Source: Ylistrum balloti (taxonomy: Eukaryota). From it: a DNA stretch of 64,000 nt. Position 1 is the stretch's first letter. Each line of letters opens with the position of its first letter. The stretch covers positions 620,001-684,000 of the forward strand of contig NW_026781960.1 of assembly GCF_031769215.1 (NCBI RefSeq), given 5' to 3'. The notes under the pieces were generated by a model. That model worked only from the letters and a program-made list of their open reading frames with translations, was not told the DNA's origin and did no database searches. Made by a program: the position numbers and the translations under genes. Shown here piece after piece: positions 4,331-60,547 of this stretch.

Positions 4331-4388
4331 TGTTGATGTCAGGTGTCGCAATGCTGTATTGGGAACTAATACGCTAGAGGTTGCCGTC

Positions 4389-15700: not shown

Positions 15701-18700
15701 GCTTTGTTTTTTGAAAGACAACATATCAGATCTTTTTATTATTCGTCGTATGGTACATACATTATCGACACTATATGTATCTATCATTCCTTCATCAGTA
15801 CCTATAACCAGATGTTTCATATAACATATTATTCGACAAAAATATTGCTCTAAATGTGAAATGAAGGAAGCAATAATGCAAACTCACCATCGCTATGTAC
15901 TTGTGTTTGTTTCGGCGGGACTTCAGTTTCTTCGATAGGAGCAGTGGGATAGATCTTGGGAACACCCTCTTCTGCTGCTGATGAAGCCTTGTACTCCTCC
16001 AAATTTATCTTATAGATAATAGAGGGGAATTCTCCCTGCTTATCGCCCTCTTTCGCTTCAGGTATGGGGGCTTGCACGTCATGAATTGTCTTTGGTTTTT
16101 GTTCCTTTGTTTCAGCAGCTGCCTTATTTCTGGTGAAGTATCCACGCAGTAAGTCGAATGCTGTTGATACTATCATCAGGGCCACGAAAAAACCACATAT
16201 ACTCCTACAAACAAAAATAATTGTTACAACTAATGACACACAGGTTGTGTAAAGAAAAATGGAACAATGGAACATCGAGAGACTAATTCAAAATGCGCGG
16301 ATGTGTTACTGACAACAACGGAATATCTTAAAAATAGAACAGAGGAAATTGTCTTTTCTATTCTTTTAGCAGGTATGTATAATTGTCAATATCCAAACGT
16401 GTTTCTAGTTTTCAGTTTTTAAATATTTATAACAATACAATTAAAACTAGAAGAACACTTACAATCCAACGATCGCTTTGGTGTCGTATGTAGTTTCCAA
16501 CAGACTACAGGTGGTATAGTATGCATAGAGAGGCGAGTCACCGGCCGGTAGTGTGGACAACACTTATGCAAAATAAAGCATAGTCTCTGATATAAGAAAT
16601 TGTCTAGATTGCTTAATGGTGTATAAATATCACGTATAATGATAAACAATAAGAAGACCGTTTAATTTCTTTTACATGTCCTTAGATATTCTTTATCTTT
16701 GCACCATTAGCGTTTACACCAAAATGATGAAAGTAACAGAAATAACGTCCTTTATACCTAAATGACTTTGTTTTTCCAAGAAGGGATAAAAATACTGAAA
16801 GACGAAAATTGAGTCCCTCAACATTATTTTTATTTACTTATTTTTCTATCCAAGGAAATACTACAGAATAAGGGTGATTTTCTTATACAAATTATCGTCC
16901 GTTTGGCACAAAATGGCTAAAATACAAGGAACCAAAAACTAGCTTGTTTAATCTCTCATATCTCAAACCTGTACATACCAACAACCGTTTGTTAAACACG
17001 GTCTATTCCTTAAAACATAACGTCATATTTTGTTTTGTTTATGTTATGCATATTGATCAAGAATAAGGTTATTTCCATCTATGTTTAGCAGGGTAACACT
17101 CCCATTTATTCATGCAAGGTGCAAAGACTCTTGGCCGAAATCAATTGACTGGTGGCAGTGTACATAAATGAATCATATCGTATTTATATAAGAAAAAGGT
17201 TTTAGCAACGGTAAACATTTCAATGTTATCCTTGGGGGTGAGCGTGACATGATGAATAAAGGACAGAAATAAGGGACACTCATGATGGATCGTGATGGTT
17301 TATTGATCTAACTTGAACATAGATCTTGACTTTGAGATAAAAATCACCACCAAATTATAAAAGGGCTGTATGTGAATCCTACCAAGCCCTTTAGTTTGTA
17401 AGTTCCTTTATTCGATGTTAAATCGTGCTATACTGATTAAGTAAATATATGATGTATGATTTATCGTATAAGAAATCAAATCGGGCATTATTAGTAGAGA
17501 TTTCATAACAAAAAATGATATTTGATTTATCAGATCGGATCCATAACTCACGAGCAAACCAATTAAACTAACGCTGTCATCAGACTGTTCATTATAAACT
17601 TAGGCGTATTTGAATGATACTCCATTCTTTTCTCGGAAACATATTTTAAGATATCTTTATACATTTACATCAGCACAATAAGATGAGAAATATTTTGAAT
17701 ACTTACACGCATTAACAAGAATCAGCATGTCATTTTCTCCACAAGTATTTGGTACGCACACACCTTCTTTAAGAACCGCTGAATAACCCTTAACAGAAGC
17801 AGGATTAAAACTAAATTTTCTGACCAACTAACTTTCTGGCAAATCATTGTGTAAAATTGTCCATATAAGTAAATATATAGGTTGTGTGTGATATTTGTAT
17901 CGCTCACGTTAGTTATTTTACAGCACGAAAACTGACATTGTAACTCATTATGGTTAGAAATAAACTGACTTGTTATCTTAAAAGAAAAAGAAATTTTCGA
18001 ATAACAAGTAGATAATTCAAAAGCATGTTGAACAATTTACATTCTTACTTCAGTGGGTGCGTGAAGCACCCCTACGGTCAAAGTTCATCCTATTATCAAG
18101 CAAAGTAAATTGTTAAAACATATATGTTTGTACAACAACCACATGATGAATTGATGTCTGGGGAGCTGAATAATACCTACAAATGTCTGGGTTGTAGATA
18201 AAAGGTTTCATTTTTTATTAATCGTACGAACACGAAATGGAATGCCATCTGGAATTTCATAACCTCGCTGTTTTTTCATTTGTAATTAAATGATTCTGGC
18301 ATTATTATTATTGGTCTAGATGCAATCCAATAGGTATTCAAGGGTATCTCGATAATTTAGCAAAAGTTCGCGCATAAAATCTGTGCTAATCTATGGATTA
18401 CATTATACCCTATCACAAACTTTAAAAATAACGTTTCGCTAATTCCTTTGCATTCATATGTTTCTAAGTAAAAATACTCGAAAATATTAAAGTAACACAT
18501 TAAAAAAATCATATTGCCCTTTCATGGCGATAAATTTCTTAATTCTTCGGAAATTAAGATGTAAGTGAGTGATAGATTGAGTTTCTACTGTAATTATGTA
18601 TTCCATTTATCATTGCTAAATACCTGAATGGAGATAGGTAAGTGGATCATACAGTATCGCGTGGAAAACTCCGAAGGTTGAATATTTAGGCATTGGTCAT

Positions 18701-19972
18701 ACATTCCCGGGAAATACGTATTTCCTTCAAGAATACCTGCTCGAATCTTCCCCATACTGTCTAACACTGTAAAGCGTAATGTACGTATTGGCTCATTGAG
18801 GTTCAACATTCATTTAATATAAAATGATATAATGTTAATAGAAATATATAAGTTCATAAGTAAGTGGTGATAAAACTAAAGCCATCTTATATGATAAACG
18901 TAGTAGGGCTGCATATCAAATATCATAAAACAATTGTAATTTTTTAAGTATGCTTTAAGAAATCAAAGTGAATTAATAATTGCCGACTTCGTTCTTAAAT
19001 ATACAATAAATATTACATCAATATATCAAATAATCTAAAGCTGATAAAAAGTATTGACGCTATTACATAATATCAAAACCAGATTTCAAATGCTCGCTAA
19101 ACTTAATGATATTATGAATAAAACGTTCTCTTCGCCTTTCATTTAATTAGAAACATCAAAACGTGCAACAAATCTTATTTCAAAAGTATTTATATTTAGT
19201 ACAACTTACTTTGGATAGCTTCCATTGAACCTTGGGTAAGTGCAGTCATCATTAGTCCTAGATCCTGAAGACAGAGAGGAGAGACACCCATACCTGTCAG
19301 CATAGCCATGGGATCAAAATTCATGGCAGTCAAGTTGGCTTGTTCAAGAAATGTCTGTAGGTCTCTGGGCCCACTTCCAAGGATTTCGGTTAACATTGCA
19401 GTTATCAAAGTCATGTTGATTTGTTGAAGAAATGTTTGAATATCTTGGGAACCACTGCCAAGGACTTGGGCTAACATTACCGTAAAATTTTCACCGGCAG
19501 TTAATGTCAAATTGTTAAGAACATTTTCAAGTATCGGAAGAGTTACGTCTGTAAGTCCTGCTCCCATACCTGTTATAATGTCTTCGAAGTCAGGTGGTGT
19601 TGATGAAGTATCTTCAATAGTAGAGAGAAATTGAAGGAATTTCAGAACATTGTAAATCATGTCTAAATTCTCATTATCCACTCCAAGAAACGATATATTT
19701 TTAGATTGTGCAAGTTCAAGGAATCGAAAAGTGGTATTGAAACCCATCCGATCAATAATGTTGGAAGTTGCATTCAGAAGTTTGAACGCAGCCTTTACTT
19801 GATTTGTGATGTTCATTCCGGACGAAATGGATGTGGCAAACTTCATAATTCCGTCTGTGTAGATGTCACGTGGAAAATAAGTGTTCGTGTTGTTAACATT
19901 ACCGAAGTACTGACCATCTATGATGGGTACTGTAATAGCCAGTAACAAAACAAGATTCAATAAGCGCGACAT
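9743..19972 (-). CDS. nrf-6: NRF-6-like / O-acyltransferase-like protein, paralog B (complete, 15 exons, 904 aa)
   Basis: Exons 19972-19210, 18766-18624, 17788-17707, 16562-16463, 16204-15888, 15451-15287, 14917-14821, 13834-13742, 13119-12954, 12729-12650, 11885-11778, 11275-11149, 10821-10635, 10326-10184 and 9886-9743 sum to 2715 nt in one open frame. Acyltransferase-3 motifs: NGIRFLSMSWVILGH, SVDTFFTMSGLL, FHRFWRLTP, SWYLANDMQFY, YIKPYCRMGPYIVG, LGRLTYCAYLCH, FEAPMMALEK. Confidence 0.95.
13500..13680 (+). repeat. Dispersed PLE-UTR-type repeat, copy in an intron of NRF-6 B
   Basis: ggtatcgtcgaagaagcagaatatgcttactatttcggaacatctggtc... matches the copies at 1120 and 47745. Confidence 0.6.
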
Positions 19973-20031
19973 TGTTGATGTCAGGTGTCGCAATGCTGTA
20001 TTGAGAATTAATACCGCTTGGTTTTTCTGTC

Positions 20032-21044: not shown

Positions 21045-22960
21045 ATATTTGTCGTTTACTTTGTGTTGGTGTCTCTCTGACTACGGCGCCTGTCATTTAC
21101 TTTGTGTTGGTGTCTCTCTGACTACGGCGCCTGTCATTTACTTTGTGTTGGTGTCTCTCTGACTACGGCGCCTGTCATACTTCGTGTCGGTGTTTCTCTG
21201 TCTAAGGCGCCTGTCATTTACTTTGTGTTGGTGTCTCTCTGACTAAGGCGCCTGTCATACTTCGTGTTGGTGTCTCTCTGACTACGGCGCCTGTCATTTA
21301 CTTTGTGTTGGTGTCTCTCTGACTAAGGCGCCTGTCATACTTCGTGTCGGTGTCTCTCTGTCTAAGGCGCCTGTCATTTACTTCGTGTTGGTGTCTCTCT
21401 GACTATGGCGCCTGCCATTTACTTCGTAATGGTATCTCTTTGACTACGGCGCCTGTCATTTACTTGGTAATGGTGTCTCTTTGACTACGGTGCCTGTCAT
21501 TAAGATCGTGTCGGTGTCTCTCTGACTATGGCGCCTGTCATATACTTTGTTTTGGTGTCTCTCTGACTACGGCGCCTGTCATTTACTTCGTGTTGGTGTC
21601 GCTATAACTACGGCGCATGTCAGATACTTCGTAATGGTGTCTCTCTGACTATGGTGCCTGTCATATACTTTGTTTTGGTGTCTCTCTGACTACGGCGCCT
21701 GTCATTTACTTCGTGATGGTGTCTCTCTGACTATGGCGCCTGTCATATACTTTGTTTTGGTGTCTCTCTGACTACGGCGCTTGTCATTTACTTCGTGTTG
21801 GTGTCTCTCTGACTATGGCGCCTGTCATTTACTTTGTGTTGGTGTCTCTCTGACTAAGACGCCTGTCATTCACTTCGTAATGGTGTCTCTCTTACTACGG
21901 CGCCTGTCATTTACTTTGCAATGGTGTCTCTTTGATTACGGCGCCTGTCATTTCCTTCGTAATGGTGTCTCTTTGACTACGGTGCCTGTCATTAATATCG
22001 TGTCGGTGTCTCTCTAACTACGGCGCATGTCATATACTTCGTAATGGTGTCTCTCTGACTACGGCAACTGTCATTTACTTCGTAATGGTGTCTCTCTAAC
22101 TACGGCGATTGTCATTTACTTCGTGTTGGTGTCTCTCTGACTACGGCACCTGTCATTTACTTCGTGATGGTGTCTCTCTGACTATGGCGCCTGTCATATA
22201 CTTTGTTTTGGTGTCTCTTTGACTACGGCGCCTGTCATTTACTTCGTAATGGTGTCTCTTTGACTACGGTGCCTGTCATTTATATCGTGTCGGTGTCTCT
22301 CTGACTACGGCGCATGTCATATACTTCGTAATGGTGTCTCTCTGACTATGGCGCCTGTCATTTACTTCGTATTGGTGTCTCTCTAACTACGGCGATTGTA
22401 ATTTACTTCGTGTTGGTGTCTCTCTGACTACGACACCTGTCACTTACTTCGTGATGGTGTCTCTCTGACTATGGCGCCTGTCATATACTTTGTTTTGGTG
22501 TCTCTCTGACTACGGCGCTTGTCATTTACTTCGTGTTGATGTCTCTCTGACTACAGTTCCTGTCATTTACTTCGTGATGGTGTCTCTCTGACTACGGTCG
22601 CTGTCATTTACTTTGTGTTGGTGTCTCTCTGACTACGGCGTTTGTCATTTACTTCGTGTTGGTGTCTCTCTGACTACGGCGCCTGTCATTTACTTCGTGA
22701 TGGTGTCTCTCTGACTATGGCGCCTGTCATATACTTTGTTTTGGTGTCTCTCTGACTACGGCGCTTGTCATTTACTTCGTGATGGTGTCTCTCTGTCTAA
22801 GGCGCCTGTCATTTACTTCATGTTGGTGTCTCTCTGACTACGGTCGCTGTCATTTACTTCGTGTTGGTGTCTCCCTGACTACGGTCGCTGTCATTTACTT
22901 TGTTTTGGTGTCTCTTTGACTACGGTGCCTGTCATTTACTTCGTGATGGTGTTTCCCTAA
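21045..22960. repeat. 41-bp minisatellite, about 46 copies
   Basis: Unit gtcatttact(t/c)gtgttggtgtctctctgactacggcgcct with occasional 39-bp variants and no unique spacers. Confidence 0.95.
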
Positions 22961-32521: not shown

Positions 32522-34426
32522 CTAGATCATTGGAGCCATTGTTGTAGTGTGGTGGTGATGTGCTCCAGATACGGTATAGACGGAGGCGCCTGCACACATA
32601 TGCTCAACATGTTGACTTAAATGATTGACCTGGTCGTGGGACATAGGGTGCTTTGTTCCTTTAGATACCAAAAACATCAGTCTTGTCTGAAAAGACAAAA
32701 AAAATTATTTCTTAATCTGTACTTGATATTTAATCTTTAGGTGAAAATAAATCGATTGTTATGACAAATGGTCAATATATCTTTAAAGGATAATTCAACA
32801 CTAATTTTATTTATTGATATACCATAAATAACAGTTACAATATTTGTTAGATTATTTTAAGGATTGATTTTCGATATTGTTACTTGCATGGACTTATGAT
32901 GGGAAGTGAACCTCGTGCAATCGAAGATCTAAAAACGGCACATACATAGAAATTAATTTCTATTTGTATATCAAAAATCAAATGATCGTACTTTTTCAAC
33001 TGATTCCAATATTTATACTTATCAATATTTATCTAAATTGTTGATAACAACAGTGATCACCTCAGCTGCTAGAAGGCCTTCCTCCGTGTGCACGTTAATA
33101 CCATGGTGTGTAGAAAATTTCTCCAGATAGCAGTTGTCTGCCAGTTTCATAACCAGGTAATTCTATCAGTAAAAATGGTTGATCTTAGTTCAGTTATTAT
33201 TGGTTTTTATTTTGAAATAAATTTAATTTCAGGTAAGTATTAGCTGAAATTTAATTTTATATCACATTATAACAAAAAGAAACGATATTCTTCGAATTGA
33301 TTTCAAATTTCGCCATTAGAGATTCTTTTTTACACAAGAGCGGCATCATTTTATCATAACTAAATTTAAAACAAAAACCGAAAAACAAAAAACGGAAAAA
33401 AAAAAGAAAAAGAAAACATTAGATATCGCCATAGAAAGTTTAGGCTTGTCCATTCGTAACAAGAACTATACACATACACATAATTAGTGAATGAACACGG
33501 CCACCACAATGTTGATATTTCCATTAATTTTACTGATAAGTTAAGGAGACAGTGTACAAGGATTTTTACACGTCTGCAATATCCTAACTGGTGCTTTTAA
33601 TATGCAAATGAATCTTCCAATATGAATATATTATTGTTCGATAAAACTAGTTTTTTATTTACCAGTCCTGCCTGTCTTTACGTTCGGACTGCAGACTGCC
33701 CATATCTTAATCTAATGTTCGAGATGAGATGCGTCAGTAAAGTATACATACTATTCAAAAAGACGTTTACCTTGACTACATATAACTATTTGAAACGGTA
33801 CATACGTCCTTTCGAAAATGTTTCCTTTCTCAAGAAAATAGGGCAAAAATATTTAAACTACTTTGGAAATTTTGACATTGTGTGCTACTTTGTATGTGTT
33901 GAATTTGGAGATTTAGGGAATATTTCTAATCTTAGGTACCTTTTTAAGACTACACATTTGAAGCAATTCATGTAAATAATATAATAATAAAACTGTTATA
34001 ATGTTATATCATGATAATGACGCTATCTTAATCATAAGTATATAACATCTATTTCCATATACATCTTAGGATTTTAGGCAACAAACAATAAAAGTAAACA
34101 CTACATACGGAAGCGGCATCGTAGTAAAAAAGTGTGGGATCTAATTCGTTGGACTCATGTGCGTGGTGGTGAGGTTTGACAGTAGTAGCCGCGTATATCT
34201 GAAAAATGTAAAACAATACATAAGGTTACTCCTTCTTTGAATCTATCATAGTTTATTATAAACAAAAATGATGTAATTACATCATACATTCACTGATTGA
34301 TAAGAATAATTAAATAAGAATAATGTAAACAGCTGATCTAGATGTCAATATGGATCTAGATGTTGGATGGTTTTCATACTTCACCTGGCCAATTACGCAG
34401 ACAGCGACAAAAACAACACCCTGCAT
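32522..34426 (-). CDS. Small His-rich secreted protein, paralog 1 (132 aa, unknown family)
   Basis: Exons 34426-34385, 34198-34109, 33162-33061 and 32686-32522, all phase 0 and GT-AG. Protein MQGVVFVAVCVIGQ|IYAATTVKPHHHAHESNELDPTLFYYDAAS|NYLVMKLADNCYLEKFSTHHGINVHTEEGLLAAE|TRLMFLVSKGTKHPMSHDQVNHLSQHVEHMCAGASVYTVSGAHHHHTTTMAPMI*. Supported by two paralogs. Confidence 0.88.
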
Positions 34427-34610
34427 GTTGGAATTTCTTTAACCACAGACAAGTAGGTCGAAAATGCCGTGAAAATGAAATTCGTGCACTGGACTCAGTG
34501 TTCCCCTCTATATACTGATCATCGATAAGGCAAGAGAGGCAATGTAAAGGGAATCTACCAAAAATACAAAACCAAATCGCAAACGCAGATAAGAATTGTT
34601 CCAATAAATG

Positions 34611-35035
34611 TCTCAAATTCAACGTAGACTCATAACAACTTAAACAGAGTTCCTTCTCAAATTCAACGTAGACTCATAACAACTTAAACAGAGTTCCTTC
34701 TCAAATTCAACGTAGACTCATAACAACTTAAACAGAGTTCCTTCTCAAATTCAACGTAGACTTATAACAACTTAAACAGAGTTCCTTCTCAAATTCAACG
34801 TAGACTCATAACAACTTAAACAGAGTTCCTTCTCAAATTCAACGTAGACTCATAACAACTTAAACAGAGTTCCTTCTCAAATTCAACGTAGACTCATAAC
34901 AACTTAAACAGAGTTCCTTCTCAAATTCAACGTAGACTTATAACAACTTAAACAGAGTTCCTTCTCAAATTCAACGTAGACTTATAAAATCTAAACAGGT
35001 TTCCTTCTCACATTCAACGTAGACTTATAAAATCC
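34611..35035. repeat. 44-bp near-perfect minisatellite, about 9.5 copies
   Basis: Unit aacgtagact(c/t)ataacaacttaaacagagttccttctcaaattc. Confidence 0.95.
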
Positions 35036-35463
35036 AAGACAGAGCTCCTTCGGTTTCCTTACATTTTAGACAGACATTAAGAAATATTTCATAAGGTTTA
35101 TCATTTATCAAAGTTTGTGCTTCGATTGATCAACCTCAAATTCAAATAAAAACGTATACAGATAAATCCATCATTTAACACACAAGATATAGATCGGTGA
35201 AAACCAATTAGTTACAAATGAATGGATACCGACAAATTTTAATACTCCAGCTAACATGTCATATTCATGTACCTACACAAATCACAGAATTTCATTAACA
35301 GCTGATGTGGTTGATATTTGATGACCAGTGCAGGATTTCATCTGAGCCACCGAAAATGGCTTATAGCTTAATGCATCTTTTTTACATTGTATTATCTTAT
35401 GTAGACTTCAATACCACACATAGAAATGTCCCTCAATGAAATAGTACTGACAAGCTTATAATC

Positions 35464-36021
35464 TTGTTACGTTACGGAGTTAACGTACAGCAAATAAAGC
35501 CCAACAGCTAGGTTACAATTCAACTTAACGACAAATACATTCTATACAGTAAAATTACAAATATTGTGATGTTGTACAGAGCTAACTACTAATTAATCAA
35601 ATGTCAGAACTTATCTTTCGGTGGAAATCATCCAAATGCAGAGGAATTCACAATAGATTGTCCAGAAAACAGGGTAACCGAAGAATAATCCAACAATTGT
35701 TTCCTCGCTGGGTATATATAAGTGCAAGTCCACAAGGCGCTATCACTAAATCACTGTAAAAGTCCTTACTTCACAGACTGAAGTCTCAAAGTAAGCCCAC
35801 TCAAGGCGTTAATACTTCAAAAAGGCTGCTCATGCTCAGTCCCATCAGGTTTATATACACTAAAGGTTTCTAGAAAGGAACTTTCTAGATGATTCTTGAC
35901 TACCAGGTACCTAGCTTGTTTACCTGTGGCTATAAAAACTTCCGGAAACACCCAGGTAATTCTAATAACCGAGTTTTCTAGAAAACAAACTGCCTAGCAC
36001 TATCCACACATTTTGTGACAA
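35464..36021 (-). mobile_element. Probable solo LTR (~560 bp)
   Basis: Termini (T)TGTTAC...GTGACA(A). Identical ATAATC on both flanks (35458-35463 and 36022-36027). Composition differs from the flanks. Confidence 0.55.
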
Positions 36022-38090
36022 ATAATCATAAACAAGTGGTTTTTTATGTAAACAATCAATATGATACAATGCATGTAAACACAGCACATCTGAATTTGGA
36101 TGAATAAACAACATTTATACATAACAATCTACTTAACCTAAATCTATATCGTAAGATTCTGGGTAGAAATCGGCATGTGATATGGACATTCTGGTAACCT
36201 CCATTGCATTTTGGTTCGTTTGGGATCGGCACAAAACATCTTGGTTTATATTGTTTGAATTCGTTCCTTAACAACTGTTGATAAAATGGAAAACAAAGTA
36301 TATGCTATGTGTCCGAAACATTGGTCACCATAAACATATGAAAGAATTTGGGATTCTGTCTCCGTCGGCAATGGAGAATCGTGGCTGATAGAAGGTGACA
36401 ATCTCCTTCAAAAACATAGCAACTGTTTCATGCAATGATATATATGTGTACATCAAAAATTTTTGGACTTTGGACTGAATTGCACAGGAAACCAACAGAA
36501 CGAATACAGCATTGGTGTAATGTGTTCTCACTTTGTGCATGACTACCCAGATATGATGCAGTATTCTGTTTAAGGTAAACTAATTAGTATATCATATCTA
36601 CTTAAGAACAATGTATTGTCCCACTCCCAAAGAGAAGGAACAAGTGAACGTACTACATCCAGCTTTGCATAAATCTGTGTTGAGGAATTGTCTGGTAGTT
36701 TCATGTTTCGCAAAAGGGGTTTACCGGCTCTATAAGATTTTTTTATGCGAATTAATCCATTTAAAACGAAATAATTGATAACTCATTCGTTTGATCACCG
36801 ACATTACACTGGAAATCTTAATGGCAAACGACCCGTTCTTTCTTAAATAAGCTTAATCATATAATTGAAGTCTATCGACTTAAATAGCCTCTCATTCAAA
36901 ACCACCAATGATTGGGGTTTTTATCATTTTTAAAGGATATTCCATTGTGATATTATCTGAGATGAGTTCGATGCTTGTTAATATACCCTGTTGTTATTCA
37001 CCAGGGTAAAACTTTGAGAAAATTATTATGTCACGGCAGATACTGATGACCTTATCACTTCCCATGTAATTCTTGCTTTCAATGGTATTTTCCCCTCGGT
37101 TTATCGAGTCAGGATTCTGCAGACATATTGGTGTTTTCTTGTTAAGGTAAATAAGCCTCATTTTCGGATGGTTGTTTTGTAAATAATTAGAAAAAAACTA
37201 TCTGCACATGAAGGATATGAATGATACTTGATATGTACAACTATCTAATTACCGACATTGTTTTAAGCTTTCTGTTTATATAGATATCTTCGTAAGAAAA
37301 CCATACTATTAATTAAAACAAACCTACCTTTACATTCTCCTATATAGATATATATTTTTCATTTATCACGTGTACCGGTTATATTCCAGATTCCCTCCTA
37401 ACTGGTAATTCCATCCTGATTTACATTCTTTGAGAATTCTGCCTTTTGGACCTGTTGAATAAAGTCATGTATAGACAAATCTTGTTTTAAGTAGATTTCT
37501 TATTCAATGAAAACATTAAATGGAACGAAAGAAAATGTTGATTTTTACTGCAGCCAAACGATTAGCTATATTCTTTTCTGAAGTTGTTTTGAAAGTTTTG
37601 TTTTGTGATTCCTAAACATCGTATTGTTGTTTTCATTTTCCAAAAACAGCGATAGCACAGTGAACGTCGATATATTGAAATCATTATGTTATGATCATTA
37701 ACATGATTTATTACTTTGAAAAATCTATTCTTTAAGCTGAAAACTATAAAATATGTTCTATCTATTGTTTTAAACTGCGTGAATAACTGATAGTATCACA
37801 TTAACAGAATTTATCATCGATTCATCTCTTTCTAATTTGCCATTAAAATACAGTTAAAATATGACAAAATTAAACAGACTTGACCATATATTTGTTTCTA
37901 GTGAATTGTTTGGCATGTATTTCACCCGTCTACTGTTTTCTTTATTTACTTATACTGTTTTTACGCTGAGTAATACTCTTTCAACAGTCTTAGCATTTTT
38001 AAAAAATTATTTTATTTTTTAAATTGCCGCTTCCTCCCAACCATAGAATAACATCAAACGACACTTCGGAATGATGCGGTATTATTTTAT

Positions 38091-39269
38091 TTAAACAATT
38101 GGAGACATTGTTGTAGTATGATGGTGATGAGCAATCGAAACCTTGTATACATCTAGACCTGCGCACATGTGTTCCACGTGCACACTTGACGCTAATACAT
38201 CACCATGGCTCATCAATGTATGGTTGCCTTTGGCTACGAGAAACATCAAATTATTCTGAAAGAGAAATATAATGTTTTGGTTAGTTGTATAGTTAAATCC
38301 CGATACAAATGTATGTGATCGTTTTACGTGTAAATGACAAAAATGTACTTGCCTCGAGTTGCATAAGACCGTCCGTTGTGTGCACCAGGGGCCTTTGGAT
38401 ATTTCTCAGCTTCTCAACATAGCAATGATTTCCGCGTTTCATAACCATTTGATGCTGTGGAGATATTAATGTATATATTTAAACATATTTCAACGTCATT
38501 GAGAATAAATGTTATCTTAAGACTTCATTTCAAATGATGGAATTCAGTGGTCATAATTCGAAATATGTCCTCCACTTCGTTCAATAGCTCAGAAAAAAAT
38601 GTTGTATATACCCAAGTTTATCTTTTATATCAAAGAATGCCGGTGAAAACTACTCCGTGGTATGATTATATTTTAAATTGTCTTATCATCAAACGACCGT
38701 TTATACAGCTGTCTATCCGCTAAATAACAACAGGCTTCACAAATTTCTGAAAGTATACTCATAAGCGAAGAGTAGTACATACAATATGATTTCCATTCAT
38801 GTTGATAACTGATTGAAAAAAAACACCACAATCAAGTGTACTTACCGAAAGGGCGTCATAGTAGAAGAGAGCCTGATCAAACTCGTTTGATTCGTGGACA
38901 TGAGGACGATGAGAAGGAGGTATAGTAGTCATACTGTAAATCTTGAGGGAAAAGAAAATATCAAGGAGTTTCACACAGAAATTGCTACCGCTCAGAAATT
39001 GCTAACGTTCAACACAGAAATTACACTTATACATAACAAATATATATTATTGTAGTGTTAATATTCAAATCGCGTCAGTTTCTTAACTCAATTATGGATA
39101 CAATAAACATACTTTTTTATCATGGAAGCAAACAGACAAAGTAACTAAAAATCTTACACCTTCCTAATAGAATTGTAGTAAGGATTTCAAGAAATGTCTT
39201 CCATCGCAACAAACAACGGTTACGTACCTGCCCAATAACGCAAACGATGACAAACAATGAAAAGTGCAT
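38091..39269 (-). CDS. Small His-rich secreted protein, paralog 2 (134 aa)
   Basis: Exons 39269-39228, 38941-38846, 38454-38353 (GC donor) and 38255-38091. Protein MHFSLFVIVCVIGQ|IYSMTTIPPSHRPHVHESNEFDQALFYYDALS|HQMVMKRGNHCYVEKLRNIQRPLVHTTDGLMQLE|NNLMFLVAKGNHTLMSHGDVLASSVHVEHMCAGLDVYKVSIAHHHHTTTMSPIV*. TATATAA at 39334-39340; AATAAA at the stop. Confidence 0.88.
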
Positions 39270-40039
39270 CTTGTTTAGGTACTGTTATACTGAGGTCTTC
39301 TCTCGACGAAAATGAACTAACACTATCTACACATTATATACTACTGGACACGGAGGTTCTTAAGGGGCGTCCTACATACTCCAGCATATTTGCAATATCC
39401 GGAAAATGTGCAGGTTTTTTACTTTAGTTTTATACATTTTTAAACCCAATATTACATTATGCTTTATACTATGAAGTTGAAAATGTATATATCAAACATT
39501 AGTCATTATTTAATAATCCAAGTATCCTTTCTTTTATTTATGGATACAAGAGTTTATAATCAGACGTATAGGTTTCATTGGCGATTCAAACATCCGTCTA
39601 AATTCGTTCGATTTTATGAACATATTCACATATCTTTGAATTATGCAATTCACAACATATGTCGATTCCCTTCCCGCTCGGAAACAGAGATCGTGACAAG
39701 TTTGTACTCTGTCACGTAGCCAAGCTGTTTGTTCCTACGAGTTCATGGGTCTAAAATTATGCCTATGTTGGGTCATGAGAGAACTATTTAATCTTAACTT
39801 CGTCGTTCTAACGGCAGTTTTCCCATTTTGGTTAAAATATGTCGATTTTGTTAGTTTCGTATTAAATGTGATATATATTTAGAAATGAGTGACATTTGAT
39901 TGGGAACGGATCATAAGAAATGTCACTTATAGTCGCAAAAGGTTTAGTTAACAGCAAGTGTTTAAAACAAACCGAAAGCATAACTGAAGACGTAAGTCCT
40001 TTCATTTATAAATGAATGTATATATCAACTCCGTAACAA

Positions 40040-40920
40040 AATACAAGTGTACCAGTGAATTAGGAATGCTCCCTGTAAACGAAATTACTGAACACAAAAT
40101 TTTAATTTTAACACAAGACAATGATTTTGCAGTTAAGGGCTTGCAAGTCCTGAATTTGAAATATATTCACATTCTCTTAGTATGACCATTGTATACACCA
40201 AGTTTCATGGCCCTAGTTTTAAAGCAAGCAAAGATACACCCATGGTACAAAATTTAACAAAGGGATTATAAAGAAGGGTTTATAGCCCCAAAAATTGCTA
40301 CAATGTATCTTTCTTAAGCGTGACTGATGTATATATCATTAAGATGTTACTGACTTTAACATTGCTACACTGCATATTGTGTTAGTACTATCGATGTATA
40401 CATCAAGACTCATTATCCTTACTGAAATGAAAGCAAAGCTATGATCTGGATACAAAATTTTAACAAAGGGTAATAAATTTGTACTTTAAGATTGCGGGGC
40501 CTGAATTTGGTACACTGCACATCTTCTAAGTATGATTAATCAATAGATAACTCAGTTTCATTATCTCCTTTTTGATGCAAGCAAACATATACTCTAGAAA
40601 ACAGTTTTCAACAAACGGCAATATTCTGTAGTTGAGGGATCCAGGGCTCTGAATTTCGTACACTGCTCATTTTCAAAGTATGAATAAATGTCATTATCCC
40701 AGTTTAAATGCGAACAAAGTTATGCTCGAGATAAGAGCAATCATTTTGTAATTGGGGGATCTAGAGCTCTGAATGTGGAACACTGTACATTGTCATAGTA
40801 TGATCAGTGTATTCACCTAGTTTCATTAACCTCATGCAAATACGAGCAACTTAACGTTACGCTCCGGACACAAAAAGACGGACGGACAAACCGGGGACCA
40901 TGTGCTCCCCGATAATGAAA
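40040..40920 (+). mobile_element. Helentron/HINE-like non-autonomous element with internal satellite-like repeats
   Basis: 5' acaagtgtaccagtg..aatgctccc. Degenerate ~150-170-bp internal repeats (tttaacaaaggg..., gaattt..gtacactgc). GACG microsatellite gacggacggac. Terminal hairpin CGGGGA-ccatgtgc-TCCCCG at about 40891-40910. Confidence 0.55.
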
Positions 40921-41207
40921 TAAAACAAACAATAAGTAGTTACAGTAGACAAGACATATGTTGTCTATTTTACCAAGACATGATGACATTTTATACAGAA
41001 CGAGGTTAACATTAATTCTCACAGCCAGTGTATGTTTGCTTCAAAATTATTTTTCTTTCTCGCAATAGAACATGTTGAGTACTGTGTCACCTACATGTCA
41101 AAAATGCTTGAAACATCAATACCGATTAACCATTAAACAAGTTATAGAAATATTGCATACTATCAAAATATAATTACCGTTATAGAAAATGATATCAAGT
41201 GTGATCC

Positions 41208-41725
41208 CGCCAGCTTATTGATTACCATTATACAAGAATAATTATCACGTGTTATCCCACCAGCTTATTGATATAATGAATACCATTATACAAGAATAAT
41301 TATCAGGTGTTATTCCAACAGCTTATTGATATAATGAATACCATTATACAAGAATAATTATCACGTGTTATTCCAACAGCTTACTGATTACCATTATACA
41401 AGAATAATTATCAGGTGTTATTCCACCAACTTATTGATATACTGAATACCATTATACAAGAATAATTATCACGTGTTATTCCACCAACTTACTGCTAAAC
41501 TAATTACCATTATACAAGAATAATTATCACGTGTTATTCCACCAACTTATTGATATACTGAATACCATTATACAAGAATAATTATCACGTGTTATTCCAC
41601 CAGCTTACTGATTACCATTATACAAGAATAATTATGAGGTGTTACTCTACCAGCTTATTGATATACTGATGGATTACCATTATACAAGAATATTTATCAC
41701 GTGTTATCCCACCAGCTTATTGATA
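41208..41725. repeat. 50/58-bp minisatellite, about 9 copies
   Basis: Unit ccattatacaagaataattatca(c/g)gtgttattcca(c/a)cagctta.. with long and short variants. Confidence 0.92.
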
Positions 41726-42986
41726 AACTAATTTGTAAAAAGGTATAAAATCATATTTTATTGATATAATCACAAGTCAGTTCCCAGGAAGAAACGTTGT
41801 TTGAAGCCCCGAGTGAATAAAAGTCAAAATTACAAACAGTTGCAAAATGCAGCGTGTGTTGCTTGCCCATCGCATTTTTTTTGTTAGGCACGTTGCTATT
41901 TTTTTTACTTTTATTTTAAAAAAGATTTTTAGGGGTAGGGTGTTTTTGTATTGTTTTTTCTGTTTATTAAGGAGACAGGAAAGCTCATGGACATATGCTG
42001 TTGATATTCTTTGCTAAATGCATGTCTGTTAATTCTGATATAGGGACAAATTATTTATTAGTCAAATGTGAATAGAACTCAAAAGTGTACTTATCTGAGA
42101 CAAAGGAGATAGAAAATGTCTCGACAATGACCTTTCTTATCAGAATATCTACATTTTCTAAACGTTATAACTGCTATCCCTTTAAGTGCCTCGGTAGCTT
42201 GTCATATATAACGTGTTGATAGTGCCGGATGATCCTTGCTTAGAGAGGATTTTATCTCCAATTCTAGTCCAATTACAAGATGTACTGTGTGTTGGCGATC
42301 TCCGTGTGCCTGTTTGGACAGGCATGTTTCTATAAGTTTTTATATGATTCATCATTGCACATGGAATGCTCATCTTGAATCCATGCCTTTCGTCTTTATC
42401 TAATTTTTTCACTGATTGTCCATATGTATTGTGAATGCGATAGGCTTTTATTCAGTTTATTTCTAGTTTTAATCCCAAAAACAAACTTAGTCTACATGTT
42501 TTAGTTCTGGATTATACTGACTGTTTGTTTGTGTTTCCTTTTGATAGCGATATCGAGCACGAGAAATTCTATAATATGTATTATTTTAGAACTATAAGTA
42601 AAGATGCAATCTAGATAAGCCTGTTTTAATAGCCCACTTTCCTTTTTACGGAATGATTTATATTATGTAATTTATATTCTTTAAACTCAGATGTCGCAGT
42701 GAAATCTTAATTTATAACCTAAATAAATTGAATTGCAATTTCTGGATGTAAACTGAAATCTATGACACTCGTCTCATCATTTCAAGGATTGAATTCTCGT
42801 TAACTATCAATGTATCGCAATATAGTGAAAATATTCATCGAAGAAAATAGCAGGCTATACGCTAGGTTGTTACATCACAGTTGAAACTTTGCTGAAATCA
42901 TGATATTTGTTTGCCACTTGGTTTCAGCTGATACGTAAATAATTGTTTTTAAAGAGATATATCAACGCAATATCGATTATTTACAG

Positions 42987-44121
42987 GTCTTGAGTGCGAC
43001 TACAATGATTCCTTCTACTCATCGTCCTCATCACCACGAACCAAATGAGTTTGATCAAGGTTTATTCTACTATGACGCATTGTCGGTAGGTACCTACCTT
43101 CAGCATTATATCAGATAAAATCCTGTATCATATGTCACAGTTACGCAAATTATTATTGGTGTTTCTGCATGTAATGATATGCATCTAGTGTATACCCCGG
43201 CCCATCGTCCCCAGCCAAATTAAAGATACATGTCACATAGGAATTGCTGATATATATATGTGTGTGTATATATGTTAAGGGTATTTCCGTCGTGGGAATT
43301 TGGTCAATTCCTGTTGCAATGAAATCAAGCGATGTACGTGTTTTCTATAATATTGTACAAAAGACACATTTTTCATAATTTAGAGTAGAATGAATTAAAC
43401 TGCATCATACAGATGTTTCGTCCTTCTAGGAATCGTCAGTGATGCTAAGGGCCTGAAATTTGAAGCCTAGGGTGCGACTAAGGAAAATCCAAAGTGATCA
43501 AAAGAAAAGTTAAAATCCAAAATGATCAAAGGAAAAGTTACAATCAAGGCCAGGACGTGCATTAGGACAAAGGATAGCTTTCACGAAACAGTAGATTCTG
43601 ATTTATTGACTTCTTAAAGTGTTTTTTTCCTATTTTGATTTCAACCATGAAAAGAGTGATTCATGGAACTTCTCTGAAATAGTTATCTTTACGTCAGCAC
43701 AACTTCGGACCAAGATTATTATATTATTTCCATCGTTTAATTCCTCTTTATAGCATCAAATGGTGATGAAGCTTGGAAGTAACTGTTACATTGAGAAACT
43801 GAAAGCTTCCCAACGGCCACAAGTCCATACAACCGATGGGCTTTTGAAACTGGAGGTGAGTATATTTTGGCAATATCAACAGTAAAACACGCCAGAAATC
43901 ACTTATCAACTTGTTTTCCTTATTTTATACTACGTCCTTTATTTGGTTCTTTGTAGAGTAACTTGATGTTCCTCGTAGCAAAGGGAACCAAAACACAGAT
44001 GGGACATGATGAAGTGAATTCTTTAAGCGTGCACCTTGAGCACATGTGTGGTGGTCAGGACGTCTTTGTAGTATCGCACCCTCATCATCACCAAACAACA
44101 ACAATGGGTATAATTGGTTGA
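42987..44121 (+). CDS. Small His-rich secreted protein, paralog 3 (inverted; exon 1 uncertain)
   Basis: Exons 42987-43085, 43754-43855 and 43957-44121 read VLSATTMIPSTHRPHHHEPNEFDQGLFYYDALS|HQMVMKLGSNCYIEKLKASQRPQVHTTDGLLKLE|SNLMFLVAKGTKTQMGHDEVNSLSVHLEHMCGGQDVFVVSHPHHHQTTTMGIIG*. AATAAA overlaps the stop. Candidate exon 1 at 41847-41891. Confidence 0.8.
43385..43450 (-). repeat. Truncated 3' tail of the LINE family seen at 8310-8460
   Basis: The reverse complement matches ctgacga.tcctagaaggacgaaaca.ctgtatgatgcagtttaattcatt. Another copy lies at 49350-49475(-). Confidence 0.7.
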
Positions 44122-46367: not shown

Positions 46368-48169
46368 TCAAAGTTTTGATAAATCCTGTTGTGTTAATTT
46401 CTCCATGCTGTAGAGGAAAGATGCTTGAAAGATTCTCTTGTTCCTGAGATAAATTGCAAAATAAAACCTCTGCACATCATGTGTTTCTTGCCAACTGTAA
46501 ACATCTAGATTGACACTGGATGGAGCTTCTCCCAGAAATGTTACTTTGGTTTCTAATATCGGATACCAACACATGTCTTCTTTGTAATAACGGTAATATC
46601 CTGCTAGGGACGCTTCTGTTGCACAGTCTGTACAGAATCTGTAAAATACTGCAAAATTTACGTGAAAATTGGTATCCATATCACTAGGTCGAGAACGAGT
46701 CAGCGTTCTAAAGGCATCAGGGGGAGGGATTAAGTCTTCTTGTCTGGTAGACATTATTGTAAGGTCAGTTTTTGGGAATTTCGAAAATGTTTCATTAACC
46801 CATTCAGGGAGTTTCAATGGACGACGTGATTCTGAATCAACACTAACAACTTTTGATTCCAGGCGCACAAGTTGCTCCATTGAAAGCGGGTCTATTAAAG
46901 TTTGTATAATAGAGAATGAGGTTTTCCCAAGAGACACAAAAGTCACTCGATGCAGAAGAGAAACGTTGTCCCTAGGAGTCTTCTGTTGTAGTTTTGGAGA
47001 ATAAAAGATGTCCTCCTGCACAGTATACGCTCTCATATGTCCGAATTTGGCAGTGAAAAATCCTTTTTCTTCTGCCTCATAAAAACTTTCTGCTAAAACA
47101 CGAATGATACCTACAATTGTAAGATGTCCTGAAAATAAGACAAGACAGATTTATTTGAAAGAAATCTACTAGTGAACGATATACATTCTACTTTATTCAT
47201 GTGCAAGATAAAAGAGAACAAGTGGAATTCGTGTTACAAATCAAACAATATCCTTATCACATTAGAGATGCATATCGGAAATTTTCACGTTTTTATTAAA
47301 CATAAAAGCAAACAATAAAATCTAAGCTCTCACAATTTGTTCGGTTCATATTGCTGAAGCAGTATTTTAAATTGTGTTTACAAAACAACTCACTAGAAAA
47401 AAACTAAAATTTCAGAAAGCATGTAATGCTATAATATACATATCTATATTTACATATACTCTATATTGATATTAAGATAGATGAGCCTCTTTTTGGCTTC
47501 ATGGTTTCCTAGTTTATTGGCATCAGATGTAATCTGAAATAAGTAATCAACTCATAACACAGAAAAAGATAAAATGTGATGAAAGATAGTTTTACGGTCG
47601 CCATATTGATCTCATTGAGAAATAAACTATTTCTTTGTGTAATATGAAGATGGATGTGTTTGATGCTCGTAAGTTTGCTTGATGGTTCCGTTTTTGTTTA
47701 CCTTGGGAACGTGACATAACATACTTGGATTAACCAAGGTTTACATGGTGGGTGTCGTCGATGAAGCAGAAGACAATTACTCTTCCGGAACACCTTGTTT
47801 TATTTTCATTGTAATTCTTTTCAGGATTCTTTCTTTTGTTCATATTCTGTCCTAGTTTAATTGAATTTGGGTCTGGATCATGTTGACATGTTGGTATTTC
47901 CTTGTTTTTGTTTGTTCGTTATTTTTATTTTTATTTATTTATTTATTTATTCATTTGTAATTAGTAATGGTCTACTTATGCTGTATACTATTTTCCTGTT
48001 GTTTACAGGTTTACGACAATTGTTATTGAAGGATTACTTATATATTCATAGGTTATTTTGCATTATCGATTATCTGTTTGAATCAATTACCTGTTCGATC
48101 ATAATAAGACGCTGTTAAACGTGGCACCATGAGGTCCACCTGTTGTCCTGTGGCAAACTTCGACTGCAT
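46368..48169 (-). CDS. Double hot-dog-fold acyl-CoA/acyl-ACP thioesterase-like protein (279 aa)
   Basis: Coding exons 48169-48091 and 47128-46368 (840 nt, phase 1, GT-AG). MQSKFATGQQVDLMVPRLTASYYDRTG|HLT..., with second-domain motif RSRPSDMDTNFHVNFAVFYRFCTD of FatA/thioesterase type. A further acceptor at 48183 implies a 5' UTR exon. Confidence 0.8.
47745..47900 (+). repeat. Dispersed PLE-UTR-type repeat, best-preserved copy (thioesterase intron)
   Basis: ggtgggtgtcgtcgatgaagcagaagacaattactcttccggaacacctt...tgttgacatgttggtatt. Confidence 0.65.
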
Positions 48170-59289: not shown

Positions 59290-59794
59290 ATATATAAAGC
59301 ACAGCTGACTGCTACCGTATAACTAGTTATTTTCATGAGTAGGAAATTTGACGATCTAAATTTGAAAGAACGTCTCTCATTATATCACATATTAAATTTT
59401 CGCGATCACGTTAATGTTCTAAGAAACAGCGAAAATAATATGCCCGCAATAATAACAGGCTCTACCGTATCTAGATGACTTTCGGAGGTTGCTTTAATGA
59501 TATAAAGGTAGAGTTTACATATCAATCTTTCATTTCATATTTTGTCAAAATCTTTAAACAGGTCACGAAAAAACAATCCACATGAATATCGTCGATATTG
59601 TAACAAAGAGTTTGATCAGAAGGCAATTTATAATCAGAAAACAATCCGATTGGTAATTATAAAATATCATTTTTCTCAATGGGGAACCTGACATGGCTTC
59701 TTTGAATGGACAAATATTTACATAACGGCGATAAAACACAAGACATCTACGTCTTGCGTCAGGAGTCTCTGTGTGAATTTTCTGTTTTGTTCTT

Positions 59795-60547
59795 ACACCT
59801 TGTCTGTACACTGATCTGTACACCTTGTCTGTACAATGATCTGAACACCTTGTCTGTATACTGATCTGTACACCATGTTTGTATACTGATCCGTACACCT
59901 TGTCTTTATACTGATCTCTACACCTTGTCTGTATACTGATCTGTACACATTGTCTGTGTACTGATATGTACACCTTGTCGGTACACTGATCTTTACACCA
60001 TGCCTGTGTACTGATATGTACACCATGTCTGTATACTCATCTGTACACCTTATCGGTATACTGATCTGTACACCTTGTCTGTACATTCATCTGTACACCT
60101 TGTCTGTATACTGATATGTACACCTTGTCTGTACACTTATTTGTACACCTTGTCTGTACAATGATCTGTACACCATGTCTGTATACTGATCTGTACACCT
60201 TGTCTCTGTACTGATCTGTACACATTGTCTGTATACTGATCTGTACACATTGTAGGTACGCTGATCTGTACACCATGTCTGTGTACTGATATGTACACCT
60301 TGTCTGTATACTCATCTGTACACCTTGTCTGTACATTGATCTGTACACCTTGTCTGTATACTGATATGTACACCTTGTCTGTACACTGATCTGTACACCT
60401 TGTCTGTATATTGATCTGTACACCTTGTTGGTACACTGTTCTGTACAACTTGTCTCTGTACTGACCTGTACACCTTGTTTGTATTCTGATCTGTACACCC
60501 TGTCTATATACTTATCTGTACACCTTGTCTCTGTACTGATTTGTACA
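59795..60547. repeat. 25-bp minisatellite, about 30 copies
   Basis: Unit ctgatctgtacaccttgtctgtata. Confidence 0.95.

What the first reader, a model, noticed from the sequence alone, without database searches (positions are those of the whole stretch)
32522..44121. Cluster of three unrecognised His-rich small secreted proteins with a conserved two-Cys core
None appears as a full ORF in the supplied track because the exons are only 42-165 nt. All share exon architecture (42 / 90-99 / 102 / 165 nt, phase 0) and a conserved core (NE.D..LFYYDA.S..VMK...CY.EK......VHT..GL..E..LMFLV.KG....H....HMC.G..V). His clusters sit at both ends (PHHHAHE/HRPHHHE and HHHHTTTM), and His is about 11-12% of residues in paralogs 1-2. 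The FYYD..LVMK..CY / C pattern resembles a BRICHOS-like fold (inference). His-rich termini suggest Zn/Cu binding or pH-triggered assembly, as in mollusc byssal, mucus or shell proteins. This is the best candidate for an undescribed family in the window.
Basis: partly seen in the sequence, partly recalled or inferred. Interest (0 to 1): 0.7.

Follow-up and report, generated by a model that had tools for sequence, protein, structure and literature searches.

The report
Scallop His-rich BRICHOS mini-protein genes
Three neighbouring four-exon scallop genes encode small secreted histidine-rich proteins built on a divergent BRICHOS (anti-aggregation chaperone) domain; the genes are real and belong to a mollusc-wide family nobody has studied, but they are not a new fold and their function is still inferred.

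Summary
Three four-exon genes (42 / 90-99 / 102 / 165 nt, all phase 0) lie at 32522-34426 (-), 38091-39269 (-) and 42280-44121 (+). Their exon translations tile three RefSeq "uncharacterized protein" records of Ylistrum balloti exactly, so the genes are annotated but unstudied.

The BRICHOS guess holds:
- Pfam BRICHOS is the only or top hit. It scores 13.5-17 bits here, and a Pecten ortholog passes the 25-bit cut-off.
- AlphaFold models have pLDDT 88, and about 97 in the core.
- Their best match among 48,161 PDB chains is the proSP-C BRICHOS structure (Z 6.1-6.8).
- The defining Asp and two Cys are conserved.

The family spans at least nine bivalve families and three gastropods. It has at least 17 loci in this genome and is under purifying selection (dN/dS 0.13-0.20).

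It departs from canonical BRICHOS precursors in two ways. It has a conserved His-rich linker and no aggregation-prone client region.

Function is inferred, not shown: a secreted trans-acting chaperone whose binding or assembly is tuned by pH or metals. No RNA reads could be laid.

This scan reached the same reading on another piece of the genome (s1-254139).

The parts
34385..34426 (-). Paralog 1 exon 1 (42 nt): start codon and hydrophobic signal-peptide segment, donor GTGAAG
   Evidence: modelled as a helix at residues 3-17
34109..34198 (-). Paralog 1 exon 2 (90 nt): Thr/His-rich linker (PHHHAHE) and first BRICHOS strand with FYYD
33061..33162 (-). Paralog 1 exon 3 (102 nt): strands 2-3 with the first conserved Cys (NCY), the VHT motif and the start of helix 1
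32522..32686 (-). Paralog 1 exon 4 (165 nt including stop): rest of helix 1, strand 4, helix 2, second conserved Cys (HMC), last strand, HHHHTTTM tail
39228..39269 (-). Paralog 2 exon 1 (42 nt): signal-peptide segment, donor GTACGT
38846..38941 (-). Paralog 2 exon 2 (96 nt): Thr/His-rich linker and FYYD strand
38353..38454 (-). Paralog 2 exon 3 (102 nt), followed by a 97-nt GC-AG intron (donor GCAAGT)
   Evidence: the RefSeq model uses the same junction
38091..38255 (-). Paralog 2 exon 4 (165 nt including stop)
42280..42321 (+). Paralog 3 exon 1 (42 nt): signal-peptide segment with a GC donor (GCATGT)
42987..43085 (+). Paralog 3 exon 2 (99 nt): Thr/His-rich linker (HRPHHHE) and FYYD strand
43754..43855 (+). 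Paralog 3 exon 3 (102 nt)
43957..44121 (+). Paralog 3 exon 4 (165 nt including stop)
39321..39367 (-). 47-nt element 52-98 nt upstream of the paralog 2 start codon, 74 % identical to its counterpart upstream of paralog 3; possible shared promoter or 5'UTR element of the head-to-head pair
   Evidence: blastn, E 7.7e-4; function is inferred only
42178..42224 (+). Counterpart of that 47-nt element, 56-102 nt upstream of the paralog 3 start codon

Best explanation
The region holds three old tandem paralogs of a four-exon gene. Each encodes a protein of 132-135 residues made of four parts: a short cleavable signal peptide (exon 1), a flexible Thr/His-rich linker of about 20 residues, one divergent BRICHOS domain of about 85 residues, and a 14-residue His/Thr tail.

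Shown or strongly supported:
- The genes are real and under purifying selection.
- The fold is BRICHOS: three strands, helix 1, a strand, helix 2, a last strand.
- The superfamily's Asp and two Cys are conserved. The Cys sit in strand 3 and just after helix 2, where the BRICHOS disulfide lies.
- The proteins belong to a mollusc-wide, uncharacterised subfamily that is expanded in this scallop.

Inferred mechanism:
- The protein is secreted and its domain is locked by the single disulfide.
- It has no aggregation-prone client segment of its own. It would therefore act in trans as an ATP-independent chaperone that binds beta-prone or partly unfolded secreted proteins.
- The conserved His-rich linker, and in scallops the His tail, titrate near pH 6-6.5 and can chelate Zn, Cu or Ni. 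They would tune binding or oligomerisation to pH or metal, reinforcing the known pH switch of the BRICHOS Asp.
For: Gene reality:
- Splice sites and phase.
- Exon translations tile the RefSeq proteins exactly.
- Orthologs in Pecten, Mizuhopecten and Argopecten.
- Gene order and orientation conserved next to a 4HBT_2 thioesterase gene in Mizuhopecten.
- dN/dS 0.13-0.20 with pS about 0.7.
- Similarity between paralogs is exon-only.

BRICHOS identity:
- PF04089 is the only or top Pfam hit in 11 of 13 scallop members, at 13.5-25.6 bits. P0006, the closest Pecten relative of paralog 3 (81 % identity), passes the 25-bit cut-off.
- 6 of 66 family rows hit it at E<=0.01, best 2.6e-8.
- AlphaFold models of paralogs 2 and 1 have pLDDT 88.2 and 87.7, about 97 in the core.
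- 2yad (proSP-C BRICHOS) fills Foldseek ranks 1-5 and 8 of 350,542 chains.
- 2yad is rank 1 of 48,161 chains by VIA-align: Z 6.1, 67 residues, rmsd 3.0. In the second-look alignments Z is 6.8 with rmsd 2.5 and 2.0 A and 21-22 % identity.
- By shape, the ESM Atlas gives three mollusc clusters and then SP-C (TM 0.50) and ITM2 (TM 0.48) BRICHOS. By features it gives GKN1 BRICHOS at 0.90.
- Over 67 rows: F40 100 %, D43 87 %, C57 100 %, C111 100 %. Asp-to-Cys spacing is 14 and Cys-to-Cys 54, against 16 and 59 in ITM2A.
- The strand and helix order matches the published description (PMC2751770, PMC10182729).

Family range: 63 cluster representatives at E<=1e-3, from nine bivalve families, three gastropods and two metatranscriptome records. 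At least 17 loci in this genome.

pH switch of the BRICHOS Asp: PMC9627735.
Against: - The three window proteins are themselves below Pfam's gathering score.
- Foldseek E-values are weak (0.3-1). Z 6-7 is in the range the tool warns can reflect a common arrangement. A bacterial DUF1488 structure scores Z 5.2-5.4.
- Both structures are predictions, and the disulfide could not be checked because no coordinates are available.
- No transcript evidence for these loci could be obtained.
- Canonical BRICHOS precursors carry a client region, and these do not. Chaperone action in trans is an extrapolation.
- No metal-binding, pH or tissue data exist.
- The C-terminal His tail is missing from most of the family.
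Confidence: 0.8

Rival explanations
1. The proteins are primarily extracellular metal binders or carriers (Zn, Cu, Ni, Cd), comparable in role to bivalve plasma His-rich proteins. The BRICHOS fold serves only as a stable scaffold, and conserved histidines (linker, H47, H71, H109) form the working sites.
For: His is 9.6-12.1 % of residues. 49 of 66 family rows have at least 3 His in the 22 residues before the F.YD motif. In-domain His are conserved at H47 72 %, H71 82 % and H109 54 %. Met and Thr accompany the His runs in both tails.
Against: No metal data exist. The family-invariant residues are the BRICHOS signature, not the His. The His count and spacing in the linker vary, and P0011 and P0012 have none there. 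The geometry of any site could not be examined.
Confidence: 0.25
2. They are host-defence precursors or His-rich antimicrobial proteins, a mollusc counterpart of the polychaete BRICHOS-AMP precursors (arenicin, alvinellacin, nicomicin).
For: BRICHOS-AMP precursors exist in marine lophotrochozoans (PMC9756803). The family is multi-copy, in tandem arrays and fast-diverging, as is typical of immune effectors. A BRICHOS-domain transcript was toxin-responsive in mussel digestive gland (PMC4203926), though it is not known to belong to this family.
Against: There is no Cys-rich beta-hairpin peptide, no dibasic processing site and no extended region after the BRICHOS domain. The tail is 14 residues and is absent from most members. 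The review states that BRICHOS-AMPs are known only in polychaetes.
Confidence: 0.1
3. The family has a fold of its own, unrelated by descent to BRICHOS, and the resemblance is convergence of a small alpha/beta sandwich.
For: The window proteins are below the Pfam cut-off. Structural Z is only 6-7, with an unrelated DUF1488 protein at 5.2-5.4. The PDB sequence search found nothing real.
Against: Sequence, structure and language-model searches all converge on BRICHOS and on nothing else. An ortholog passes Pfam's cut-off. The Asp and both Cys are conserved at the right spacing and in the right secondary-structure elements. Identity to 2yad is 19-22 % in the structural alignments, against 5-6 % for DUF1488.
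Confidence: 0.06
4. The ORFs are decaying or non-expressed gene copies, and the annotation models are ab initio artefacts.
For: No RNA run was found and no contigs could be laid. Two of the nine introns use GC donors.
Against: All twelve exons are intact and in phase. dN/dS is 0.13-0.20 at near-saturated synonymous divergence. Orthologs and gene order are conserved across scallop genera. The GCAAGT donor matches the usual GC-AG consensus (my own knowledge). Two family members come from a metatranscriptome.
Confidence: 0.02

Closest known systems
BRICHOS domain superfamily (Pfam PF04089; proSP-C BRICHOS structure 2yad)
   Same: Same predicted fold and order of strands and helices. The conserved Asp and two Cys are present at comparable spacing. 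The protein is secretory, with a hydrophobic N-terminal segment and a linker before the domain.
   Different: Sequence is very divergent: 13.5-17 bits for the window proteins and about 20 % identity to 2yad. The domain is shorter and lacks the long helix1-helix2 loop. There is no amyloid-prone client segment, either transmembrane or C-terminal. The linker is His-rich, with a family-wide motif.
Gastrokines (GKN1-3), secreted vertebrate stomach BRICHOS proteins
   Same: They are small secreted proteins with a signal peptide rather than a membrane anchor. They are the nearest named cluster by language-model features (0.90).
   Different: Gastrokines are about 180 residues and have a C-terminal region carrying a conserved Cys pair (PMC2751770). 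The scallop proteins stop 14 residues after the domain and have only the two domain Cys. No orthology is shown, and gastrokines have no His-rich linker.
BRICHOS-AMP precursors of polychaetes (arenicin, alvinellacin, capitellacin, nicomicin)
   Same: They are marine lophotrochozoan BRICHOS proteins, and both are secreted.
   Different: Those precursors release a C-terminal Cys-rich beta-hairpin peptide. Nothing comparable is encoded here.
His-rich extracellular proteins of molluscs (mussel plasma His-rich glycoprotein, byssal preCol His-rich flanks)
   Same: Secreted, with clustered His that could bind metals or respond to pH.
   Different: There is no sequence or fold relationship. This comparison is by composition only and rests on my own knowledge, not on a test.

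Membership tests
BRICHOS domain superfamily (PF04089) | One highly conserved Asp and two conserved Cys (PMC2751770, PMC10182729) | tested here: met
   In P0001 numbering, D43 is 87 %, C57 100 % and C111 100 % conserved over 67 family rows. All three are invariant in the nine scallop proteins. Spacing is 14 and 54, against 16 and 59 in ITM2A.
BRICHOS domain superfamily (PF04089) | Central beta-sheet flanked by two helices: three N-terminal strands, then two helices separated by a strand | tested here: met
   Two AlphaFold models give E-E-E-H-E-H-E with core pLDDT about 97. The best PDB match is 2yad at Z 6.1-6.8, rank 1 of 48,161 chains. These are predicted models, not solved structures.
BRICHOS domain superfamily (PF04089) | Score at or above Pfam's gathering cut-off (25 bits) | tested here: inconclusive
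   The window proteins score 14.5, 13.5 and 17.0 bits, below the cut-off, but BRICHOS is the only or top hit. The closest Pecten relative, P0006, scores 25.6 bits and others 22.7-24.0. The best family member has E 2.6e-8.
BRICHOS domain superfamily (PF04089) | Intramolecular disulfide joining helix 2 to the central sheet | not testable with these tools
   By DSSP, C57 lies in strand 3 and C111 directly after helix 2, which is the expected placement. Disulfide mapping by mass spectrometry is needed.
BRICHOS domain superfamily (PF04089) | Precursor architecture: hydrophobic segment or signal peptide, linker, BRICHOS, and an aggregation-prone client region | tested here: not met
   The signal peptide, linker and domain are present. 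No client region is present: the tail is 14 residues and is absent from most of the family. This is a feature of the precursors, not of the domain. proSP-C also lacks the C-terminal region.
BRICHOS domain superfamily (PF04089) | Anti-amyloid or anti-aggregation chaperone activity | not testable with these tools
   Needs recombinant protein and aggregation assays.
Gastrokine family | C-terminal region after BRICHOS carrying a conserved Cys pair (PMC2751770) | tested here: not met
   The mature scallop proteins have only the two domain Cys and a 14-residue tail.
BRICHOS-AMP precursors | C-terminal Cys-rich beta-hairpin antimicrobial peptide released from the precursor | tested here: not met
   There is no Cys and no processing site after the domain.

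The most novel reading that the evidence does not exclude
Molluscs carry a large, so far unnamed family of stand-alone BRICHOS proteins. These have lost the built-in client and gained a conserved His-rich linker, which would make them secreted, trans-acting chaperones switched by pH or metal. They would keep aggregation-prone secreted materials (mucus, digestive secretions, byssal or shell-matrix precursors) soluble until release. If so, they would be the smallest natural BRICHOS chaperones and the first with a metal or pH switch outside the domain.
Probability: 0.2. Interest if true: 0.6.

Novelty: new variant of a known kind. Interest (0 to 1): 0.4.

Why it matters
BRICHOS domains are studied as anti-amyloid chaperones, and every characterised one is tied to a client segment in its own precursor.

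A family of 110-150-residue 'BRICHOS-only' secreted proteins would be useful in two ways. It is widespread in bivalves and gastropods, expanded to at least 17 loci in a scallop, and mostly invisible to Pfam thresholds.

First, it would give minimal natural domains for structural and mechanistic work. Second, it would test whether BRICHOS can work purely in trans.

The conserved His-rich linker offers a simple, testable handle for pH and metal dependence.

For mollusc genomics, the result replaces dozens of 'uncharacterized protein' labels with a domain assignment.

Tried and rejected
- Exon-by-exon Pfam scan. It gave nothing except a chance Tic22 hit (E 0.13); the pieces are too short.
- PDB sequence searches with the family profiles. 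The only hits were artefacts: His-tags, and engineered signal-peptide-plus-His-tag GPCR constructs.
- RNA evidence. One run was found, of unknown kind and probably genomic DNA because it holds the introns. Read laying laid 0 contigs. Splicing is therefore supported only by annotation, conservation and selection.
- The look-up of encoding contigs for P0001 found nothing on record.
- Literature searches by locus names and accessions gave 0 papers. Searches for BRICHOS or gastrokine together with molluscs found nothing on this family.
- Maximum-likelihood tree. The protein is too short and most forks are unresolved. Only the paralog 2 orthogroup (92/94) and the scallop clade (90/96) have some support. 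Orthology of paralogs 1 and 3 rests on best identities (69 % and 81 %).
- DUF1488 (2gpi, Z 5.2-5.4). Rejected as a relative: it is bacterial, has 5-6 % identity and lacks the Asp/Cys signature.
- Cadherin 'fusions' among Mytilus hits. I read these as merged gene models, not as a real architecture. This was not checked.


Full report
**What is in the sequence**

Reading the flanks gives three genes with identical architecture.
- Paralog 1 (-): exons 34385-34426, 34109-34198, 33061-33162, 32522-32686.
- Paralog 2 (-): exons 39228-39269, 38846-38941, 38353-38454, 38091-38255.
- Paralog 3 (+): exons 42280-42321, 42987-43085, 43754-43855, 43957-44121.

Exon sizes are 42 / 90, 96 or 99 / 102 / 165 nt, all phase 0. 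All acceptors are AG after a pyrimidine-rich stretch. Seven donors are GT and two are GC: GCAAGT after paralog 2 exon 3, and GCATGT after paralog 3 exon 1. His makes up 12.1, 11.2 and 9.6 % of residues.

**How the spliced proteins were handled**

I did not type or search a joined model. Exons were searched one by one by reference.

For the word search I used a real 104-codon open frame of the window that ends in paralog 2 exon 4. I restricted scoring to the exon part. That search returned a 134-aa RefSeq protein of Ylistrum balloti, identical over the exon.

A second search returned the records for the other two genes. A script confirmed that the exon translations tile P0009 (132 aa), P0001 (134 aa) and P0005 (135 aa) exactly. 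All later full-length work used these database records.

A fourth, divergent paralog outside the window was only read exon by exon.

**The genes are real but not 'unrecognised'**

All three are RefSeq models (LOC132543683, LOC132543678, LOC132543675), named 'uncharacterized protein'. Each has close counterparts in Pecten maximus, Mizuhopecten yessoensis and Argopecten irradians.

Paralogs 2 and 3 are head to head. In Mizuhopecten the same arrangement recurs: a 135-aa gene and a 136-aa gene head to head, a further family-sized gene (153 aa, not examined further) on one side, and a 4HBT_2 thioesterase-like gene on the other. This mirrors the window, where a 4HBT_2 ORF lies at 46368-47036 (-).

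Between the paralogs, synonymous sites are near saturation (pS 0.69-0.78) while pN is 0.21-0.32, giving dN/dS of 0.13-0.20. DNA similarity is limited to the exons, the very short intron 3, and a 47-nt patch upstream of the start codons of paralogs 2 and 3. These are old duplicates kept by selection on the protein.

Direct RNA support is missing. The only run found holds the introns and is probably genomic. Laying it returned nothing.

**What the protein is**

Single exons gave nothing in Pfam. The full proteins gave the BRICHOS domain PF04089 as the only or top hit in 11 of 13 scallop members.
- The three window proteins score 14.5, 13.5 and 17.0 bits, below the 25-bit cut-off.
- Orthologs score 22.7-24.0 bits.
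- The closest Pecten relative of paralog 3 scores 25.6 bits and passes.

A profile of nine scallop proteins, searched against 1.84 billion representatives, found 63 clusters at E<=1e-3. Six of the 66 rows hit BRICHOS at E<=0.01, the best at 2.6e-8.

AlphaFold2 models built with the 67-row alignment are confident. pLDDT is 88.2 for paralog 2 and 87.7 for paralog 1, and about 97 through the core. Both show strand-strand-strand-helix-strand-helix-strand. This is the layout published for BRICHOS: three short strands, then two helices separated by a strand (PMC2751770; PMC10182729).

Structure comparisons point the same way.
- Foldseek ranked the six chains of 2yad (proSP-C BRICHOS) at positions 1-5 and 8 of 350,542 chains. 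The E-values were weak, 0.3-1.
- An exhaustive VIA-align pass over 48,161 representatives put 2yad first at Z 6.1 (67 residues, rmsd 3.0 A, 19 % identity). The field fell to Z 3.5 by rank 4.
- Second-look alignments gave Z 6.8 for both models, with rmsd 2.5 and 2.0 A and 21-22 % identity.
- The only other row above Z 5 is a bacterial DUF1488 protein at 5-6 % identity.
- In the ESM Atlas the nearest shapes after three mollusc clusters are SP-C and ITM2 BRICHOS (TM 0.50 and 0.48). The nearest named cluster by sequence features is gastrokine-1 BRICHOS (0.90).

The superfamily's three hallmark residues are conserved: Asp43 in 87 % of rows, and Cys57 and Cys111 in 100 %. The Cys lie in strand 3 and just after helix 2, where the BRICHOS disulfide joins helix 2 to the sheet.

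No single line is decisive, and the Z values are modest. However, independent methods converge on one family and on nothing else. I put the BRICHOS assignment at roughly 0.9.

**The family**

Named members come from these groups:
- Bivalve families: Pectinidae, Mytilidae, Ostreidae, Myidae, Veneridae, Mactridae, Unionidae, Dreissenidae and Solemyidae.
- Gastropods: Haliotis, Patella and Gigantopelta.
- Two records from a marine metatranscriptome.

All are labelled uncharacterised or hypothetical. This genome has at least 17 loci with the same intron positions: four on the window's contig, four on C333, eight in a tandem array on C39 and one on C187.

My result is independent of it and agrees.

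Family-wide signatures beyond the BRICHOS triad are F40, Y42, H47, Y58, the V-H-T motif (H71, 82 %), G75 and E80 (96 %). There is also a segment right after the signal peptide of the form Thr-Thr ... His-rich ... His-Glu. 49 of 66 rows have at least three His in the 22 residues before F.YD.

The fourth paralog on this contig, about 108 kb beyond the window's end, has an expanded His repeat in exon 2.

**How it probably works**

Shown: a secretory protein with one BRICHOS domain and His-rich flanks.

Inferred: canonical BRICHOS precursors pair the domain with an aggregation-prone segment of the same polypeptide. These proteins have none, so if they are chaperones they must act in trans on other secreted proteins. 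The BRICHOS Asp titrates between pH 6 and 7 and controls compaction and assembly (PMC9627735). Clusters of His next to the domain titrate in the same range and chelate transition metals. A pH- or metal-tuned binding or assembly switch is therefore the most economical mechanism. I give that functional reading about 0.35.

The main rival is a metal-binding role in which the fold is only a scaffold (0.25). An antimicrobial-precursor role like the polychaete BRICHOS-AMPs is unlikely, because no C-terminal peptide is encoded. Tissue of expression, which I could not obtain, would discriminate between these quickly.

**Comparison, novelty and verdict**

These are members of the BRICHOS superfamily by domain criteria. 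They are not gastrokines: there is no C-terminal Cys-pair region and no orthology shown. They are not BRICHOS-AMP precursors either.

The published surveys that I could read list 13-14 BRICHOS families, and none is described with this architecture. I could not check whether their 'group II' contains any of these proteins. No paper was found for any of the locus names or accessions I searched.

I rate the finding as a new variant of a known kind: a minimal, client-less BRICHOS protein with a conserved His-rich linker.

Interest is moderate (0.4). But the genes are already annotated, the fold is known, the scan has seen the family before, and the function remains inferred.

Noticed in passing
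G000:C103 about 790938-792378 (+), = L004:222-1662, about 108 kb beyond the window's end: A fourth, divergent paralog with the same exon layout. Its exon 2 carries an expanded His-rich tandem repeat (HHTTVKHHGHHHTT twice). Its counterparts may be Argopecten P0013 (180 aa) and a Mizuhopecten record misnamed 'homeobox protein 2-like' (P0065).
   Followed up: partly
window 38256-38352 and 42322-42986: Two of the nine introns use GC donors (GCAAGT and GCATGT). The RefSeq models use the same junctions. They are worth confirming with RNA reads.
   Followed up: partly
window 34611-35051 and 41171-41733: Tandem repeats lie in the upstream regions of the genes. A 44-bp unit in 10 copies (95 % matches) starts 185 nt upstream of the paralog 1 start codon. 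A 58-bp unit in about 9 copies lies between paralogs 2 and 3.
   Followed up: no
window 366-4351 and 15850-19993: A segmental duplication about 15.6 kb apart. Each copy carries a 265-aa ORF (signal-peptide-like start, many N-x-S/T sites) and a 141-160-aa ORF with a hydrophobic segment. The copy tested (ORFs at 366-848 and 3554-4351) has no Pfam match. An 81-bp repeat recurs in both copies.
   Followed up: partly
window 46368-47036 (-): A 222-aa ORF with a thioesterase-like 4HBT_2 domain (E 4.7e-14). A 4HBT_2-like gene flanks the orthologous cluster in Mizuhopecten, so gene order is conserved.
   Followed up: yes
window 61027-61845 (-): A 272-aa ORF matching the NXPE4_C domain (E 4.1e-48), a likely exon of an NXPE-family gene.
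   Followed up: partly
window 21050-22952, 59794-60547 and 62247-64000: Satellite arrays: a 41-bp unit in 46.6 copies, a 25-bp unit in 30 copies, and a 20-bp unit in 88 copies that runs off the window's end. They explain the composition and skew anomalies in the profile.
   Followed up: no
window 6165-6929 (+): Two adjacent ORFs, the second with a weak endonuclease/exonuclease/phosphatase match (E 0.004). This is probably a fragment of a LINE-type retroelement.
   Followed up: no
P0040 and P0041 (Mytilus records): In two Mytilus records the small BRICHOS protein sits at the C-terminus of cadherin-repeat models of 628 and 760 aa. These are probably merged gene predictions rather than a true fusion.
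   Followed up: no
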